NCBI GenBank assembly: GCA_020184695.1
Contig: JAANOX010000245.1
Coordinates: 1 to 64,000, forward strand
DNA from: Histomonas meleagridis 2922-C6/04-290x
Lineage: Eukaryota; Protista; Parabasalia
Length of the DNA: 64,000 nt
Reading direction: 5' to 3'
Position 1 is the stretch's first letter, and the number at the start of each line of letters is the position of its first letter. Made by a program: the position numbers and the translations under genes. The notes beneath the pieces were generated by a model. The model was not told where the DNA came from and did not search any database. It worked only from the letters and a program-made list of their open reading frames with translations. Below are positions 30,893 to 40,184 of this stretch, in pieces.

Positions 30893-31447
30893 AATAAAGT
30901 GACTAAGTTTTATTTTCATATATGTACATAAAATCAATGAAATGTGTAAAAAAATTTTTTTGTCGCTGGTTAACGTTATTTAATGTAAAATCTTCATTCA
31001 AATACTGAAACGTATTTTTATTTAAAAATTTGTTAGAAACGATGTTGGCTTTGATTGGTTTACATATCAATTGAACGTTTTTTTGCTCATCAAACAGTCA
31101 ATTTTATGATCGGTGAAAAAATATTCTTCATTGACATATTGGTTTTTTGGACATTGCCACGATAATTTAAAGCATTTTTCATGTCAAAAGAAAATCTTGC
31201 TTAATTATTTATTTGTTCGGTAATATGGTATATTAATTACTAATTTTTTTATATAAAATAATGAACCTATATTATAGAATTTTCAAAGGGATATATAAAA
31301 ACACATTAAATATATTATGTAAACATTTCATTCTTTTGCGTAAAATAATTCTTGGCGAAAATCTTCATTGTTGATTAAAATTTTCAATTGATATTTGGCC
31401 GAAATAACCGTTTTATTCAAATCTGTGTGAAAAAGCTCAGGCAACCA

Positions 31448-32497
31448 ATGAGCAACGAGCAAAACCCTTTTGATTTTTCCTACCAAGGACTACCGAACAC
31501 AGCTAACAACTCCGATGACTTCACAAATGCTTTTTTTGGTGCAGATGATTCTGGTTTTAATCAAGATGATTTCCAATTTTCTTTCGATAACGAACCAATA
31601 TCAGACAATTTTTTCGATTTTGATGGCGGACATACAGAAACAGTAACCAGTGATTCACATGTTGAAGTTAATCCTTTTTCATTTAATCTTCAACAAAACA
31701 AGTATCTTGAAGACTTCACACCAATTCAACAAACACAAGATTTTGGTTTTTGGGGTAACACAAGTCAACCAACAGCTCCAGGTCATAAACGTACCTCTTC
31801 TCGAACAGATTCATTTAGTCCAGATACTACTTTTGAACAACCCAAACAACAACCACGAAACCACCGAACGAAGACAGCACCTATACCAGGTTTTAAACAG
31901 AGTTCACATCGCAAAGATTTTTTCGAAGTTGGACAAAATGCGCATGCAATATCTTTACCGAACAAGACGGAAGAAGACAGAAAATTTGCTGAGCTCTGCC
32001 ATGATGAGACAGTACAGATTAATCCATTTCAAATTGGGTTTATTCCACATAATTATTTTCGAAATCAATTTTACACATTTGGGAACATAGTTGGTGATTA
32101 CTTCCAAAAGAAGAACAATCCCAACTGTCGATTTCTTCACAAGCTTTATAACGCCATTAAGCTTGGGGAAGCATATCCTGAATATTTGATATATGTTGGT
32201 ATTTCATGGATATCTAATGAAGTTATCCAAGTCTCCAAGTACAGATTCGCACGTCTTTTAGGGATAAAGACGATTGACGGGTCATTGTTTCATCGCCAAG
32301 GAAACTTTCCTTCGTTCGGATTCACGGAGCTTTCCGGCGAGGAAATCATCCGTGAATTTGGCAGTCAAAAATTGAATAGCATGGATTGTGACGTGGATAA
32401 ACTATTGAAACACGAGGAAGGAATATTCGTTCGAAACGGAAACATACAACAAATACTCGAAATGTGTAAATGGAAAAGTAGTAAAGTTCGTGACTAA
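31448..32497 (+). CDS. Initiator-binding-domain (IBP39-like) family protein
   Basis: C-terminal HKLYNAIKL...VGISWISNEVIQVSKYRFARLLGIKTIDGSLFHRQGNFPSFGFTEL resembles, from recall, the trichomonad IBD family. First ATG is at 31448. Confidence 0.7.
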   Translation: MSNEQNPFDFSYQGLPNTANNSDDFTNAFFGADDSGFNQDDFQFSFDNEPISDNFFDFDGGHTETVTSDSHVEVNPFSFNLQQNKYLEDFTPIQQTQDFGFWGNTSQPTAPGHKRTSSRTDSFSPDTTFEQPKQQPRNHRTKTAPIPGFKQSSHRKDFFEVGQNAHAISLPNKTEEDRKFAELCHDETVQINPFQIGFIPHNYFRNQFYTFGNIVGDYFQKKNNPNCRFLHKLYNAIKLGEAYPEYLIYVGISWISNEVIQVSKYRFARLLGIKTIDGSLFHRQGNFPSFGFTELSGEEIIREFGSQKLNSMDCDVDKLLKHEEGIFVRNGNIQQILEMCKWKSSKVRD

Positions 32498-33744: not shown

Positions 33745-33943
33745 GGATCTAAAAATATGTTTATTCCCACATAGTGTCGAGTTAGGAACTTGCTGTTGAC
33801 ATATGATATGAAATATCTTCGATATTTAATTATGTCAATTGAATACTTTATTTGAAAAAGTGGTGGTATAAATAAATTTAAAAAAAAATGACAAAAATTT
33901 GAAAATAAATGCCACAATTTGGCAGGACCATTTATTCAATTCA

Positions 33944-34939
33944 ATGGCGAGAAGAAGTGTTGAAGCACAAGAATCAGCCAGGAGAAGAGATATTGGTGAG
34001 TTACAAATTAATCAGGTTAACCCAGAAGCTCAAAGATGGATTGCAACTATTAACAATTATTCTGATGATCAGTATAACAGTGTCAAAATATTTATAACAA
34101 TGTGGTGCAGATATGGAATAGCAGGAAATAAAATTGCACCGACTACTCAAACTCCACACCTTCAATGTTATTTCCATTCAAAAAAGAGAATGAGAAAACA
34201 ATCAATATACGCTAAATTAGGTTTTAATAATTTATATCTTGAAGTTGCAAAAGGTACAGAGGATTCTAATATTCGTTATTGTAGAAAGGATAATAATTAT
34301 TTCGAGGATGGTAAATTACCTGCAACAGTTGAAAAAAAATTAGGAGAAGATGATTTTTATGGGCAAATGATGAAAGACATAAAGGAATTGTCAATTGAAG
34401 AATTAGATGCTAAATATCCTAAACAGATGATTCTTCATCGAAATCAAATTCTATCAGTTAGAAGAGATTCAATGTTAAGAAATGTTGCAATCAGAGGAAC
34501 TTATAATGGAGATTTACAAATAAAGAATTTATGGATTTTTGGTAAAGCAGGTATTGGAAAATCTAAATGGGTCCACCAAGTCTCACCACTGGAGATATAC
34601 CCAAAGGTATTTAATAAGTGGTGGGACGGGTATATATTGAATGATCATAAAATTGTCTGTATAGATGACTTCCCTTGGAAAGGGGATGCATTAACTCAAC
34701 ATATTAAAATTTGGGCAGACAGATATCCATTTTTAGGTGAAATAAAAGGAGGATCTATGGTAATTTATTCAGGTACATTTAGACTTATAATAACAAGTAA
34801 TCATAGTATTGATGAATGCTTTCAAAATGCTTCGGATGAAGATATTCAAGCTCTAAAACGTAGATTTAAAGAAGTGCAAATATTGGCTACTGACGATTTA
34901 TTCCTACAGTCAGTGGTAACTTTTGAAATGATTCAGTAA
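33944..34939 (+). CDS. rep: CRESS-DNA virus replication initiator Rep (HUH endonuclease + SF3 helicase), intact, 331 aa
   Basis: Motif I WIATINN, motif II PHLQ, motif III YCRK, Walker A GKAGIGKS, KWWDGY, Walker B IDDF, motif C ITSN, Arg finger ALKRRF. ATG 33944 is preceded by Inr-like TCAAT/TTCA. Confidence 0.95.
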   Translation: MARRSVEAQESARRRDIGELQINQVNPEAQRWIATINNYSDDQYNSVKIFITMWCRYGIAGNKIAPTTQTPHLQCYFHSKKRMRKQSIYAKLGFNNLYLEVAKGTEDSNIRYCRKDNNYFEDGKLPATVEKKLGEDDFYGQMMKDIKELSIEELDAKYPKQMILHRNQILSVRRDSMLRNVAIRGTYNGDLQIKNLWIFGKAGIGKSKWVHQVSPLEIYPKVFNKWWDGYILNDHKIVCIDDFPWKGDALTQHIKIWADRYPFLGEIKGGSMVIYSGTFRLIITSNHSIDECFQNASDEDIQALKRRFKEVQILATDDLFLQSVVTFEMIQ

Positions 34940-36009: not shown

Positions 36010-37204
36010 TTCCAAATATTATTTTGAATTATTATATTATCAGAATAAATTTTAATAAAATTAAATAAATGTCCTTAGCATTGATATCAATTCCATTTTG
36101 TGCAAGAAGTAATTTAACTATTTCTATGTGATCTCTTTCAGATGCTTTCATAAGTGCTGTCCTAAATATTACATATAACTTCCAAATATTATTTTTAATT
36201 GTTAAATGATTAAAATAAATATTTAATAAAACAAATAGATATCTTTTGCATTAATCAATTCCTTTATGTTCTAGAAGCAGTTGAACAACATCATAGTTAC
36301 CAACACCAGATGCAACCATTAGTGGTGTTTCAAAATATTTTTATAATTTTTGAAAATATATATGAATTATCAAATTGTTAAAATAGATATTAAATAAAAC
36401 AATTAAATATTTTTTATATCTATATTAATGTCTTTTTGTTCAAGAAGTAATTTCACTGTTTCTATATTAAAATTTTCAGATGCAATAAGAAGCGCTGTAT
36501 TAAATATTTATAATAATTTCCAAATATTATTTTAAAATTTCAAATTCTTTATATAAATATAAAATAAAATAAATATATACTTTGAGCATTCACCTCAATT
36601 CCTTTTTGTTTCAGAAGCAATTTAACGATTTCTATGTTATCTTTAACAGAACCATAAATAAATGATGTAAAATATAATTTTATTTTATTCCAAATTTTAT
36701 TTTGAATCAAAAAATTATTCGAACAAGCACCAAATAAAACAAATTTATATTTTTATGATTGAAATCAATTCCTCTTTTAGCTAGAAGTAATTTAACTATT
36801 TCAGGATTTCCTGCTGCTGAAGCATATATAAGTGCTATCATAAAAAATATAAATAATTTTCGAATATTATTTCGAAATATTAAATTAATTAAATAAATAT
36901 CGAATAACACAGAGAAATATCTTCAGCATTAATATTAATTCCTTTTTGTTCAAGAAGTAATTCAACGATTTATATATGATATTTTAAAGATGCAATCATA
37001 AGTGCTGTTTTAAATATTTTTAATTAACTCCATATTTTATAATGAAATATCGAATTCTGAAAATAAATTTTTTTCATAACAAATAAACATTTTTATCATT
37101 AACATCAATAACTCTTTGTTCAAGAAGGAATTGAACGATTTCTGTATATCCTTTTTCTGATGCATAAATGAGTGGTGTCTTGAATAATTTTAATAATTTC
37201 CAAT

Positions 37205-38367
37205 TCTCATCAAGCCACTTTTTGAAATGAAAAAATTAAAAAAAATAATTTCGTTCACAATTTTCAATTCAATTAAAAATTGCATAATTTTATTGTTTAT
37301 ATAGAAAGTGCCTCTGAAATTTCCATACCAGCTCTGCTCATGTCTACTGAAACATATCGAGTATATGCAGAACTTTTCCACCTTCCATGGGCTTTTATGA
37401 TACAATCATTAACATCTTTTAGTGAGGCATAATATGCTGCTCCTCTACGAAAACTATGAAATTTATAATTTTGATATTCTTCAACTCCAATCATCCTAAG
37501 TACATAAATAAGATGGACTCTGAGTGTGGATTGAGTTCGAGATTCTATGTGATCATTACTAGAAATTAAGTTTAAATAATTTATAAATCGGAATGGGCTA
37601 TAATCTGTCTTATTATCATAAATATATGTAAACGTACCATTCCCGGACTGATCTGTTTTAGCAGTCTGTATGTTTAGTTTTATTAAGTTTTCGCCTTCAA
37701 TTACAATATCGCTTTTTTTAAGGTTTAGCGCTTCACTTATTCTGAGAAATGCTGCAAACATTAACAATATCAAGAATATAAACTTTAAATTATCAATATT
37801 TGTTGGTGGAAATTTTTCAATTATTTTCGAAAACCATTTTGGATCAAACGGTAACTTTGCATTCGGACAAAAACCTGAATATAGTGACCTCCTTATTCCA
37901 CTCTTAAATATTTTGAATTTTATTGAATGTGTTAATATTTCCAAGTCATTTTGTTGAAAATAATGTGTAAAACTATTAATGTAAGCTTGTAACGTACAAC
38001 ATTTCATATTCTGATTCTGTTTAAATATAATGAATGCAACCATTTTGTCATGAGTAATAGGAAATGGTTCTTCGTGTATTAGATTTATCATCACTTTGGC
38101 ATAAGCATGAATCAGCCTATCATATGTACTTTTCGTTCCTGCTGAAACATTTGCGGCTGATATTGTATCAGCTTCAGCAAGTAATTGCTCCATCAATGAC
38201 ATTTTAAATATGATTCATAAAAAAAACTTAAAAACAATATTGAAAATTGTGAGCGAAATTACTTTTTTTAATTTTTTCATTTCAAAAAGTGTCGATGAGA
38301 ATTACACATAATAAAGACAACTTTTTAAGACGATGACCAAAGTTCATCGTCTTAAAAAGTTGCCTTT
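37205..38367 (-). mobile_element. Tyrosine-recombinase-only element with split inverted repeats, no TSD
   Basis: 37202-37268 is inverted at 38239-38303 (two substitutions plus a small indel region). 38308-38372 is a palindrome. Joining the flanks restores the spacer motif AAATAAT|ATTGGAAATT. Confidence 0.8.
37297..38202 (-). CDS. DIRS/Crypton-type tyrosine recombinase, intact, 301 aa
   Basis: Catalytic set FLRISE (R), AKTDQ (K), HSFRRG (HxxR), HGRWKS (W), AYTRY (Y); N-terminal SAM-like region (GTKSTY...TLQAYINS). Confidence 0.92.
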   Translation of the reverse strand: MSLMEQLLAEADTISAANVSAGTKSTYDRLIHAYAKVMINLIHEEPFPITHDKMVAFIIFKQNQNMKCCTLQAYINSFTHYFQQNDLEILTHSIKFKIFKSGIRRSLYSGFCPNAKLPFDPKWFSKIIEKFPPTNIDNLKFIFLILLMFAAFLRISEALNLKKSDIVIEGENLIKLNIQTAKTDQSGNGTFTYIYDNKTDYSPFRFINYLNLISSNDHIESRTQSTLRVHLIYVLRMIGVEEYQNYKFHSFRRGAAYYASLKDVNDCIIKAHGRWKSSAYTRYVSVDMSRAGMEISEALSI

Positions 38368-40184
38368 ATTATTTGTGAAATAACATATATAAATATCGAA
38401 TCATTAGGAGAAATTGTAAAAAAAAAAATAAATAAACTCCTTTAGCATTTAAATTAATACTTTTTTGTTCAAGAAGAAATTTACAAATATCTGTATAACC
38501 TTTTTCAGATGCATTTAAGAGAGTTAAAAATATTTTGGATAAATTCCAAATGTTACATTGAAATGTTATATCATATGAATAAAATTTGAAACAAATTAAC
38601 AAACAATATTTTCTTTAAAATTATAAAAACATTTATTTTCAAGAAGGTAATAAAAAAGTTCTTTATTCCATGAAATAGTTTCAATTTTCGAAAAATCGAT
38701 AAGAGGCTGTTGCTTTTCATAAAAATATTGTGTAATAAATAGATTACCAGCTTCAATAGATGCACCTATAAGAGAATAATTAATTTTTAATCCATTTGTT
38801 TCAAAAAATGATAAAAGTTCATAGTTATTGTATAAAATAGATAGCTTTCCTAAGTATGATATTTCAACATAACTTTCAATTTTGTTTTCATAAAGATAAT
38901 GGAAGACATCATTCCGATGAAATTCAATTGCTGTTTTATATCCATCTTTAAATGATGAATGATTTTGTTCACATAAATGAATAATTTCAAGATTTCCACC
39001 TGCCACAGCATATTTTCCTGCATTTTCTACATTTGCACCATTCATAAGTAAATATTTAAAACATTCAATTGATCCAAAAAATGCTGCATAATCAATTAAT
39101 GTTACATTTGGATATTTTTGATTAATAAAATCACATTTTTCATAAAGTGATGGTTCAATTATTTGATTAAAATCAAAATCACTTTGAGATGATATTTGTT
39201 GAAGTTTTTTTATATCATCATTTCGAATTATTTTTGAAATCTCATTTGGATTAACACCTTCTTTAATTAATTTCTTATGTAGTTCCCAATTATTTGCTTT
39301 AAGTTTATGAATGTTTTCACAAAAATATTTATAAAATTGATTTTCCTTGAAGATAATATATTCATCTTCAGACATATAATGTGCAAAATATGGCGTCTTT
39401 TTACACTTTTTTTGATCGACAAATCCATTTTCAATCAATCCTTCAAGGAGATAATTTGATTCTTGACTTTCATTTGAGAAGAGAATTTGCACAAAAATAT
39501 CAAATACAATATTTTCACTTTCCTTTTTTGTTCCAATTTTTTGTAAATACTTTAGACATAATTTGCTTTGACCTTTTAAAATAAAATATAAATAAATCAT
39601 TCTACAAACAATGTGGAAGTATGAAAATGCAAATTTTGAAGAAAAGTATAACAATGAAGAATCAACAGCTTCTTCAATATTATTTTCATTTAAATCAAAA
39701 ATGACCTTTTCAAGGTTATGCAGATTTTGAAGATTTTCACTAAATTTGGCTGCTGTATTGCTTTGATTTCCACCCATTAACTCTTGAAAAACAATAAGAA
39801 AGTATAACGTGCAATAATTCAAAATTAAACTAAAATGGTCGGTTATTTAGTTTTTGAAGCTCAGAAAAAAATGCCAAGAACCAAAGAAAAAATCAAATTT
39901 TGTGCGCAATTTGATCGACATTTGATTTGAACACACCGATTCATGTTAACTGACAGTTTTCGACCAAACAAACAAATTCAACTTTTTCAGATGGAAGCAG
40001 CTGGGGTTTGCTGTGACTTATTGAAAATTTCTTTTCTAGGAATTTTCTGTTTTTTTGGAACATAACATGTGCTCGTTCACTTGAGTTTTCTTATTTTTAA
40101 AGAAGTAGTTTCTCATTTGATATATATTCAAAAAAGTGATGATAATTTTATTTTTTTGGTTTAAATAATCTTATTTAAAAATAC

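What the first reader, a model, noticed from the sequence alone, without database searches (positions are those of the whole stretch)
37205..38367. Recombinase-only mobile element with a split inverted-repeat layout (A...A' B' B)
Seen: the left end A (37205-37268) reappears inverted at 38239-38300. The right end B (38344-38367) appears inverted at 38313-38336. A' and B' are adjacent, separated by ATTACACATAAT. This internal block is the reverse complement of a right-end/left-end circle junction. The only gene is an intact YR, and there is no TSD. Established: DIRS use ITRs plus an internal complementary region, Ngaro/PAT use split direct repeats, and Cryptons are YR-only but lack long inverted repeats. 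Inference: a distinct YR element that fits none of these layouts, perhaps using a fold-back or circular intermediate, or a DIRS derivative mobilised in trans.
Basis: partly seen in the sequence, partly recalled or inferred. Interest (0 to 1): 0.85.

Follow-up and report, generated by a model that had tools for sequence, protein, structure and literature searches.

The report
Minimal recombinase transposon with hairpin end
A 1.2-kb mobile element in a parabasalid protist carries only a Cre-like tyrosine recombinase gene plus a conserved set of inverted repeats, including an internal mirror copy of its own joined ends, and belongs to a family of eukaryotic DNA transposons I could not find described.

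Summary
It sits precisely, without target duplication, in one unit of a 170-nt ankyrin-like array. Its only gene encodes a 301-aa Cre-like tyrosine recombinase with an intact R-K-H-R-W-Y set, under strong purifying selection.

The layout [B-loop-B'][A'-gene-A] recurs in relatives down to 36% protein identity, in metagenomes and partly in Tritrichomonas foetus. The inner hairpin arms differ completely between families yet stay complementary. A C-GAA-G mini-hairpin loop recurs, and small asymmetries between the joined ends and the internal copy are conserved.

The recombinase groups apart from a DIRS-order recombinase, and no reverse transcriptase is nearby. It is therefore an autonomous recombinase-only element, not a DIRS deletion product.

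My best reading is a Crypton-class element in the broad sense that integrates through a circle joined A-to-B. The junction and its internal mirror copy then form a ~200-bp palindrome that I suspect is the real, folded substrate. That mechanism is inferred; no circle junction was seen.

First-stage notes of this scan report similar elements elsewhere in the same genome.

The parts
37202..38376 (-). Whole element (1175 bp); the gene reads on the minus strand
   Evidence: Boundaries come from the ends of the inverted repeats and from restoration of the 170-nt host unit after removal.
37202..37268 (+). Outer arm A, the terminus downstream of the gene. It starts AATTCTCATC, then has a 14-nt stretch, then the CACTTTTTG motif.
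   Evidence: The same arm type is found in all related families.
37297..38202 (-). Tyrosine recombinase gene, 301 aa, Cre-like, with likely catalytic R154, K182, H249, R252, W275 and Y283
   Evidence: invariant columns; Cre at E 2e-17; pLDDT 90.7, best fold Cre; dN/dS 0.07-0.24.
38239..38303 (-). Inner arm A', the inverted copy of A. It has 12 nt rather than 14 nt between AATT and CAC.
38304..38336 (+). Inner hairpin arm B', abutting A'
38337..38343 (.). Hairpin loop or spacer CCAAAGT. Relatives have C-GAA-G or GCGAAGC here.
38344..38376 (+). Outer hairpin arm B, the terminus upstream of the gene
36738..37201 (-). Host 170-nt ankyrin-like array, left flank. The target reads ...TTTCC|GAAAT...
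38377..38596 (-). Host 170-nt array, right flank, continuing into the 408-aa ankyrin/DUF3447 ORF

Best explanation
This is an autonomous DNA transposon that encodes only a tyrosine recombinase. It belongs to a deep family found mainly in parabasalids.

Shown: the element is a discrete 1175-bp insertion without target duplication. Its Cre-like recombinase is intact and under purifying selection. The layout host|B-loop-B'|A'-gene-A|host is conserved, with a conserved arm (AATTCTC, 12 or 14 nt, CACTTTTTG) and a family-specific but always self-complementary hairpin.

Inferred: the recombinase excises the element as a circle by joining the A end to the B end. In that circle the new junction X (A|B) lies 3-11 nt from its inverted copy X' (B'|A'). 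Together they make a ~200-bp near-perfect palindrome nucleated by a stable GAA mini-hairpin.

I propose that this palindrome, extruded as a cruciform or folded in a single strand, is the real substrate. The conserved imperfections of the stem are a 2-nt asymmetric internal loop about 10 bp from the cut on the A side and, in three families, an A-G mismatch at position 4 on the B side. These would mark the A|B strand as the one that is cut and exchanged with an AT-rich target. The B'|A' strand would stay intact. That explains why every integrated copy keeps an uncut mirror copy of the junction next to one end, always on the 5' side of the gene.

I hold the general claim (autonomous recombinase-only transposon, circle joined at A|B) at about 0.75 and the folded-substrate step at about 0.35.
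For: - Discrete insertion.
- Repeats far beyond chance.
- Recombinase: the family profile matches Cre over its full length at E 2e-17. The AF2 model has pLDDT 90.7 with Cre as the best fold. R, K, R, W and Y are invariant and H is nearly invariant. dN/dS is 0.07-0.24 with saturated synonymous sites.
- Mobility: the 73%-identical family lies in at least 5 different flanks with identical ORFs across many samples. Word depth inside the element is about 2,800-25,000 against about 500-1,400 in nearby unique sequence in the DNA run.
- Layout conservation: the layout recurs at 73%, 64%, 43% and 36% protein identity.
- Covariation: the inner hairpin arms differ entirely between families but remain complementary.
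- Conserved asymmetry: there are 14 nt in outer A against 12 nt in inner A' in 5 families. The same A-versus-C difference at position 4 of B occurs in 3 families.
- Loop: C-GAA-G or GCGAAGC occurs in 4 families. This is the known ultrastable DNA mini-hairpin (PMC13037366).
- Folding: junction constructs fold at -78 to -100 kcal/mol against -14 to -24 for shuffles, with the internal loop at the same place in every family.
- Crossovers at the loop centre: a chimeric hairpin in L020 against L022, a solo half-hairpin in L003, and flipped loops in L004 and L005.
- No RT near any copy, and separation from a DIRS-linked recombinase in the tree.
Against: - No circle or tandem A|B junction was seen in any fetched contig. 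The single read-laying run was swamped by the ankyrin repeats and gave no usable joints.
- RNA contigs barely cover the gene, at depth 0-5, so activity in this strain is not shown.
- Any pair of abutting inverted repeats folds well, so the folding energies do not separate a folded from a duplex substrate.
- The loop occurs in both orientations, so the GAA mini-hairpin is not tied to one strand.
- One family (L015) shows B' but no clear outer B. The two T. foetus copies keep the A arms but no clear hairpin.
- The 2-nt difference between A and A' could equally act on duplex DNA, making X active and X' inactive.
Confidence: 0.6

Rival explanations
1. This is an ordinary duplex-DNA, Crypton-like cut-and-paste element that moves through a double-stranded circle. 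The recombinase acts on the duplex A|B junction and an AT-rich target with a short shared core. The internal B'A' block and the hairpin are accessory: extra binding sites that build the synapse, a decoy, or promoter and regulatory DNA. They are not a folded substrate.
For: - The enzyme is Cre-like, and Cre works on duplex sites.
- The start of B resembles the host sequence after the A end: 7 of 9 in the 73% family and 6 of 9 in the window. This parallels the short terminal direct repeats of Cryptons (PMC3212892).
- Four copies of the C(A)ACTTTTT motif in alternating orientation would suit a tetramer.
- The 14-versus-12-nt difference could simply make X' inactive.
Against: - It does not explain why the inner hairpin arms are free to change in sequence but must stay complementary.
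- It does not explain why a GAA mini-hairpin loop recurs.
- It does not explain why crossovers map to the loop centre.
Confidence: 0.25
2. The free form is a small linear or rolling-hairpin replicon whose ends are closed hairpins. The recombinase would act like a telomere resolvase or terminal-resolution nickase at the base of the hairpin. The integrated copy is then one unit plus the unfolded hairpin.
For: - The loop occurs in flip and flop orientations.
- There is a chimeric palindrome joined exactly at the loop.
- L023 has a palindromic junction of two A ends.
- The nick position at the base of the hairpin, next to a conserved binding arm, recalls parvovirus terminal resolution (my own knowledge).
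Against: - The protein is a 301-aa Cre-like recombinase. No protelomerase appears among the 50 best structural matches.
- The palindrome centre is not itself symmetric.
- The right end carries no hairpin.
- No polymerase or Rep is encoded.
- The L023 junction is followed by a gene in the wrong orientation for a head-to-head dimer.
Confidence: 0.08
3. This is a DIRS-type element that lost its RT. The internal block is a true internal complementary region, and copies are made from RNA by a reverse transcriptase supplied in trans.
For: - The topology (ends complementary to an internal block) is that of the DIRS internal complementary region (PMC13465315).
- The nearest labelled outgroup recombinase belongs to an RT-RNaseH-Dam element.
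Against: - No RT or RNase H lies next to any of about 20 loci.
- The family forms a separate branch from the DIRS-linked group.
- A non-autonomous element would not keep its ORF at dN/dS 0.07-0.24 across saturated divergence.
- There are no long inverted terminal repeats.
- The A arm sequence, rather than the transcript ends, is what is conserved.
Confidence: 0.05
4. This is a domesticated host recombinase with an invertible or regulatory cassette, not a transposon.
For: Inverted repeats flank the whole gene, as in invertible switches.
Against: - Copies lie in different flanks.
- Depth indicates multiple copies.
- The element interrupts one unit of a regular array.
- The same layout occurs in many diverged families.
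Confidence: 0.02

Closest known systems
Crypton DNA transposons (recombinase-only; Goodwin 2003; Kojima and Jurka 2011, PMC3212892)
   Same: Both encode a tyrosine recombinase as the only protein and leave no target duplication. Both show a short imperfect direct match between one end and the flank of the other end. Both are presumed to move through a circular intermediate.
   Different: Cryptons are described as lacking terminal inverted repeats and long repeats. This family has 26-65-nt inverted arms around the gene plus a 33-35-nt-arm hairpin at one end. It is much smaller (1.2 kb). It has no DUF3504 or GCR1_C domain hit.
DIRS1-like retrotransposons (inverted terminal repeats plus an internal complementary region)
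   Same: Both have an internal block complementary to the two joined termini. The recombinases are related.
   Different: This family has no RT, RNase H or methyltransferase and no long inverted terminal repeats. The internal block lies 3-11 nt from one terminus and forms a hairpin with it. The recombinase falls on a separate branch.
Cre/loxP of phage P1
   Same: Cre is the best sequence and structure match over both domains, including Trp at the second-His position. The B-loop-B' palindrome with a 7-nt asymmetric centre looks like a lox site.
   Different: The arms next to the spacer are not conserved, even between copies encoding the identical protein (L020 against L022). The integration point is 33 nt away from the palindrome centre.
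Folded single-strand substrates of bacterial tyrosine recombinases (integron attC with IntI; CTX phage attP with XerCD; strand-biased circularising elements, PMC9345347)
   Same: In both cases an imperfect hairpin is made from two inverted half-sites. Conserved bulges or mismatches could choose the strand, and only one strand would be exchanged.
   Different: These are resemblances of anatomy only. No single-stranded form has been shown here, the host is a eukaryote, and the recombinases are not specifically related.
2-micron-type plasmids (Flp/FRT) and Euplotes Tec elements
   Same: Both combine a tyrosine recombinase with inverted repeats.
   Different: Flp is a poor structural match (rank 49). 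Those elements are many kilobases long with several genes and long repeats.

Membership tests
Crypton | Tyrosine recombinase is the only transposition protein; no RT | tested here: met
   There is a single ORF with a domain hit. No RT was found in any related locus.
Crypton | No terminal inverted repeats and no long repeats | tested here: not met
   There is a 53-65-nt inverted repeat around the gene and a hairpin with 33-nt arms at one end. Both are conserved in relatives.
Crypton | Short (4-6 bp) direct repeats at both termini as recombination substrate | tested here: inconclusive
   The start of B matches the flank after A at 6 of 9 in the window and 7 of 9 in the 73% family. The match is imperfect and lies in AT-rich DNA.
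Crypton | Recombinase groups with the CryptonF/S/A/I clades or carries DUF3504 or GCR1_C | tested here: inconclusive
   There is no DUF3504 or GCR1_C hit. No labelled Crypton sequences were available for a tree.
DIRS1-like | RT, RNase H and methyltransferase genes | tested here: not met
   These genes are absent from the window element and from all fetched loci. They are present next to the Clytia outgroup recombinase.
DIRS1-like | Long inverted terminal repeats | tested here: not met
   The two termini share only a roughly 12-nt motif.
DIRS1-like | Internal region complementary to the joined ends | tested here: met
   See the alignment, for four families.
Ngaro / PAT / VIPER | Split direct repeats (A1 ... 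B1 A2 B2) | tested here: not met
   The direct repeats in the region are host array units only.
Integron attC / CTX-type folded substrate | Recombination of a folded single strand with exchange of one strand | not testable with these tools
   Only the hairpin anatomy and its conserved imperfections are seen.
Telomere resolvase systems | Protelomerase-type enzyme acting at the centre of a perfect palindrome | tested here: not met
   The best folds are Cre and Xer, with no protelomerase in the top 50. The palindrome centre is asymmetric.

The most novel reading that the evidence does not exclude
These would be the first eukaryotic tyrosine-recombinase elements whose substrate is a folded or extruded hairpin built from the circle junction and its internal mirror copy, with only one strand cut and exchanged, as in integron attC or CTX phage. 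As a corollary, the internal complementary region of DIRS retrotransposons would be a legacy of such RT-less DNA elements, not an invention for reverse transcription.
Probability: 0.3. Interest if true: 0.9.

Novelty: new variant of a known kind. Interest (0 to 1): 0.7.

Why it matters
How eukaryotic recombinase-only transposons move is essentially unknown. Cryptons have no recognisable ends, and the role of the DIRS internal complementary region has been a model on paper since 1985.

This family offers a very small (1.2 kb), high-copy, apparently recent system. It has sharply defined ends, a defined target and a Cre-like enzyme that could be made and assayed.

If the palindrome is the substrate, folded-DNA recombination by tyrosine recombinases would be extended from bacteria to eukaryotes. 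It would also give a concrete ancestor-type architecture for DIRS elements.

The element's apparent preference for spacers of ankyrin gene arrays matters for annotating parabasalid genomes. A compact site-specific recombinase with a long target may also interest tool builders.

Tried and rejected
No informative joint, circle junction or empty site could be read. Only depth and a few pieces were usable.
- Exact look-up of the window protein: not on record.
- P0004 contig: no DNA available.
- IMG/VR scans by protein pattern and by the conserved arm: nothing found, so no link to catalogued viral contigs.
- JGI metagenome scan: one short uninformative locus.
- Search for an A|B junction in the 25 fetched loci: none.
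- L011 (scaffold with N gaps) and T. foetus L012 and L019: the A arms are present but there is no clear hairpin. These copies are degenerate or are a simpler variant.
- Literature searches: no description of this layout or of recombinase-only elements in parabasalids. Repbase could not be consulted.
- Rejected: chance repeats; a DIRS deletion product; the idea that motif-to-motif spacing across the hairpin is fixed at 27 nt. That spacing holds in three families but is 21 nt in L020 and 11 nt in L018.

Full report
**1. What is in the sequence**

The region holds one long ORF, 37297-38202 on the minus strand, 301 aa. Two inverted repeats are present.

- Repeat A/A' pairs 37216-37268 with 38239-38291: 53 nt, 96% complementary.
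- Repeat B'/B pairs 38304-38336 with 38344-38376: 33 nt, 94% complementary, with a 7-nt loop.
- Neither occurs in shuffled sequence.

With the conserved start AATTCTCATC the A arm begins at 37202, and its inverted copy ends at 38303. A' and B' therefore abut.

The reverse complement of the internal block matches the sequence obtained by joining the two termini. The only differences are a 2-nt indel plus one substitution in A and two substitutions in B.

The host context is a 170-nt tandem array with start-to-start spacing of 170, 170, 1349 and 170 nt. Deleting 37202-38376 gives a 174-nt unit that aligns with its neighbours, with a 1-nt gap at the junction and no duplicated bases. The element is thus 1175 bp, precisely inserted, without target duplication.

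**2. The host**

- The neighbouring ORF has ankyrin and DUF3447 domains.
- An upstream ORF has the parabasalid initiator-binding domain.
- G+C is 21-35%.
- The only named homologues are from Tritrichomonas foetus.

The genome is therefore a parabasalid. I did not determine the species. The pattern of public runs would fit Histomonas meleagridis: two DNA samples from 2021, RNA from 2023 and RNA from 2013. That is a guess.

**3. The protein**

- Pfam gives only a weak Phage_integrase hit for the window protein. However, 23 of 25 family members hit it, and several also hit the N-terminal SAM-like domain.
- A profile of 25 members matches Cre recombinase over both domains at E 2e-17.
- The AlphaFold model has pLDDT 90.7. 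Its best solved-structure matches are all Cre, followed by Xer proteins.
- R154, K182, R252, W275 and Y283 are invariant and H249 is nearly invariant. This is the Cre-type catalytic set with Trp.
- Between the window gene and its relatives, synonymous sites are saturated (pS about 0.7) while dN/dS is 0.07-0.24. The gene is a working gene, not a relic.

**4. The family and its mobility**

Word-indexed and exhaustive searches find a large family. There are 170 clusters at 50% identity with E<=1e-10, and the listed top hits are mostly about 300 aa.

The carrying contigs are typically 1.0-1.9 kb. That is what collapsed repeats look like in assemblies.

The closest family (73% identity, protein P0001) was recovered with an identical ORF from 13 contigs of many samples. 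It has at least five different left flanks and three different right flanks.

In a DNA run that holds the window sequence, summed word depth inside the element is about 2,800-25,000. In nearby unique sequence it is about 500-1,400. This is a rough sign of many related copies.

RNA contigs hardly cover the gene.

First-stage notes of this scan list several more such mini-elements in the same genome. I did not check them.

**5. The layout is conserved**

In gene orientation the order is host | B - loop - B' | A' - gene - A | host. I found it in:

- the window;
- the 73% family (L001-L010; 35-nt arms, 3-nt loop, 56-nt A repeat);
- the 64% family (L013);
- a 43% family with a G+C-rich gene (L018);
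- a 36% family (L020 and L022).

A 46% family keeps short A arms and B', but I could not see the outer B (L015 and L016). Two T. foetus copies keep the A arms only.

Four features stand out.

- **(i) The A arm is conserved across the whole family.** It reads AATTCTC, then a short stretch, then CACTTTTTG(A).
- **(ii) The hairpin arms near the loop share no sequence between families, yet each pair is complementary.** Five different inner stems were seen.
- **(iii) The loop is C-GAA-G or GCGAAGC in four families**. This is the extraordinarily stable DNA mini-hairpin (PMC13037366). An earlier first-stage note pointed me to this.
- **(iv) The terminal junction and the internal copy differ in the same way everywhere.** Outer A has 14 nt and inner A' 12 nt between AATT and CAC in five families. 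The fourth base of B is A in the outer copy and C in the complement of the inner copy in three families.

Distances from the motif to the A|B boundary are fixed at 14 nt on the B and B' side. The distance across the hairpin is not fixed: 27, 27, 27, 21 and 11 nt.

**6. Targets**

In the window the element lies between ...TTTCC and GAAAT... in the part of the 170-nt unit that lies between the ankyrin-coding stretches.

All independent copies of the 73% family share a TATTTC left flank and a CAAAATAATATTTG right flank. Most of them lie in similar arrays, in either orientation.

The host bases after the A end resemble the first nine bases of B: 7 of 9 in that family and 6 of 9 in the window. This is as expected if a short core is shared by the element junction and the target.

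**7. Signs of recombination at the hairpin centre**

- L020 and L022 encode the identical protein. L020 combines the B arm of one subtype with the B' arm of another, joined at GC-GAA-GC.
- L003 has a lone outer arm plus loop, followed at once by host array in inverted orientation. The same flank and the same B variant carry a complete element in another sample, L006.
- L004 and L005 carry the loop in the flipped orientation.
- L023 shows two A-type ends joined as a palindrome without any hairpin.

I cannot fully explain these. They are recorded in the notebook.

**8. Relation to known elements**

- The held literature describes Cryptons as lacking inverted repeats and bearing 4-6-bp terminal direct repeats.
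- It describes DIRS as having inverted terminal repeats plus an internal complementary region.
- It describes Ngaro, PAT and VIPER as having split direct repeats (PMC3212892, PMC13465315).
- None of the searches found this layout, or any recombinase-only element, in parabasalids.
- Structure searches place the protein among eukaryotic recombinases, some of which are fused to or next to RT.
- One labelled outgroup cluster (Clytia hemisphaerica) lies downstream of an RT-RNaseH-Dam ORF with split direct repeats. It is a DIRS-order element.
- In a maximum-likelihood tree of 47 sequences, the about-300-aa family is one side of a branch (94/92). The DIRS-linked cluster sits in the other, starred group (97/83). 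All loci with a verified layout fall in one starred clade of 13.
- The label 'recombinase-only' was verified only for the fetched loci. The tree has no labelled Crypton references and no root.

**9. How it most likely works**

The general picture is a recombinase-only transposon that leaves as a circle joined A to B and enters an AT-rich site with a short shared core, leaving no duplication. This is inference from the anatomy and from what tyrosine recombinases do.

The internal mirror copy is what needs explaining. In the circle, the junction and the mirror copy form a palindrome of about 200 bp around a mini-hairpin loop. Single strands of that construct fold at -78 to -100 kcal/mol, with an asymmetric internal loop at the same position in each family.

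I propose that this folded or extruded stem is the substrate and that its conserved imperfections mark the strand to be cut. After a one-strand exchange and replication, the product would be exactly what is seen. One arm of the stem is split between the two ends. The other arm is intact beside end B, always upstream of the gene. This mirrors integron attC and CTX phage integration in bacteria.

The weaknesses are plain:

- No junction molecule was seen.
- The folding energies follow from the repeats themselves.
- The loop flips.
- The 2-nt difference could work on duplex DNA.

The duplex Crypton-like reading, the hairpin-replicon reading and the DIRS-in-trans reading are listed as rivals with their tests.

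**10. Verdict**

The claim of a distinct layout is supported and extended to a whole family. The DIRS-derivative idea is not supported. The mechanism remains open. I rate it a new variant of a known kind (recombinase-only DNA transposons), with a real chance of a new mechanism.

Noticed in passing
window 38454-38972 (skip 38528-38604): RNA contigs of two runs join 38454-38527 to 38605-38972, leaving out 77 nt of the 170-nt ankyrin-like unit. The array spacers seem to be removed from RNA although they lack obvious GT-AG ends. The recombinase element sits in the equivalent spacer of the next unit.
   Followed up: partly
window 33899-34939 (+): A 346-aa ORF has Viral_Rep and RNA_helicase (superfamily 3) domains. 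It is a CRESS-type Rep lying 2.3 kb from the element. No A-type arm flanks it.
   Followed up: partly
window 31388-32497 (+): An ORF carries the initiator-binding domain IBD (E 1e-16), a marker of parabasalids.
   Followed up: no
L003:1-270: A solo outer hairpin arm plus loop (114-152) sits between two ankyrin arrays in opposite orientation. The same flank carries a full element in L006. This is either a rearrangement at the hairpin centre or an assembly chimera of an unusual kind.
   Followed up: partly
L020:458-524 versus L022:1-32: The two contigs encode the identical recombinase but differ in the inner arm of B'. The L020 hairpin is a chimera of two subtypes joined at GC-GAA-GC.
   Followed up: partly
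L023:300-400: The 3' end of a diverged recombinase gene and its A end are joined through AC to an inverted outer-type A arm, followed by a complete second gene. This forms a palindromic junction of two A ends without a hairpin.
   Followed up: no
protein P0072 (Tegillarca granosa, 1111 aa): This mollusc gene model combines a plasmid or viral Rep origin-binding domain (31 bits, above cut-off) with pieces of this recombinase family. It hints at a link between these recombinases and rolling-circle replicons.
   Followed up: no
L026-L029: The Clytia hemisphaerica recombinase cluster (P0121/P0188) lies downstream of an RT-RNaseH-Dam ORF and is followed by split direct repeats. It is a DIRS-order retrotransposon recovered from marine metagenomes.
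   Followed up: partly
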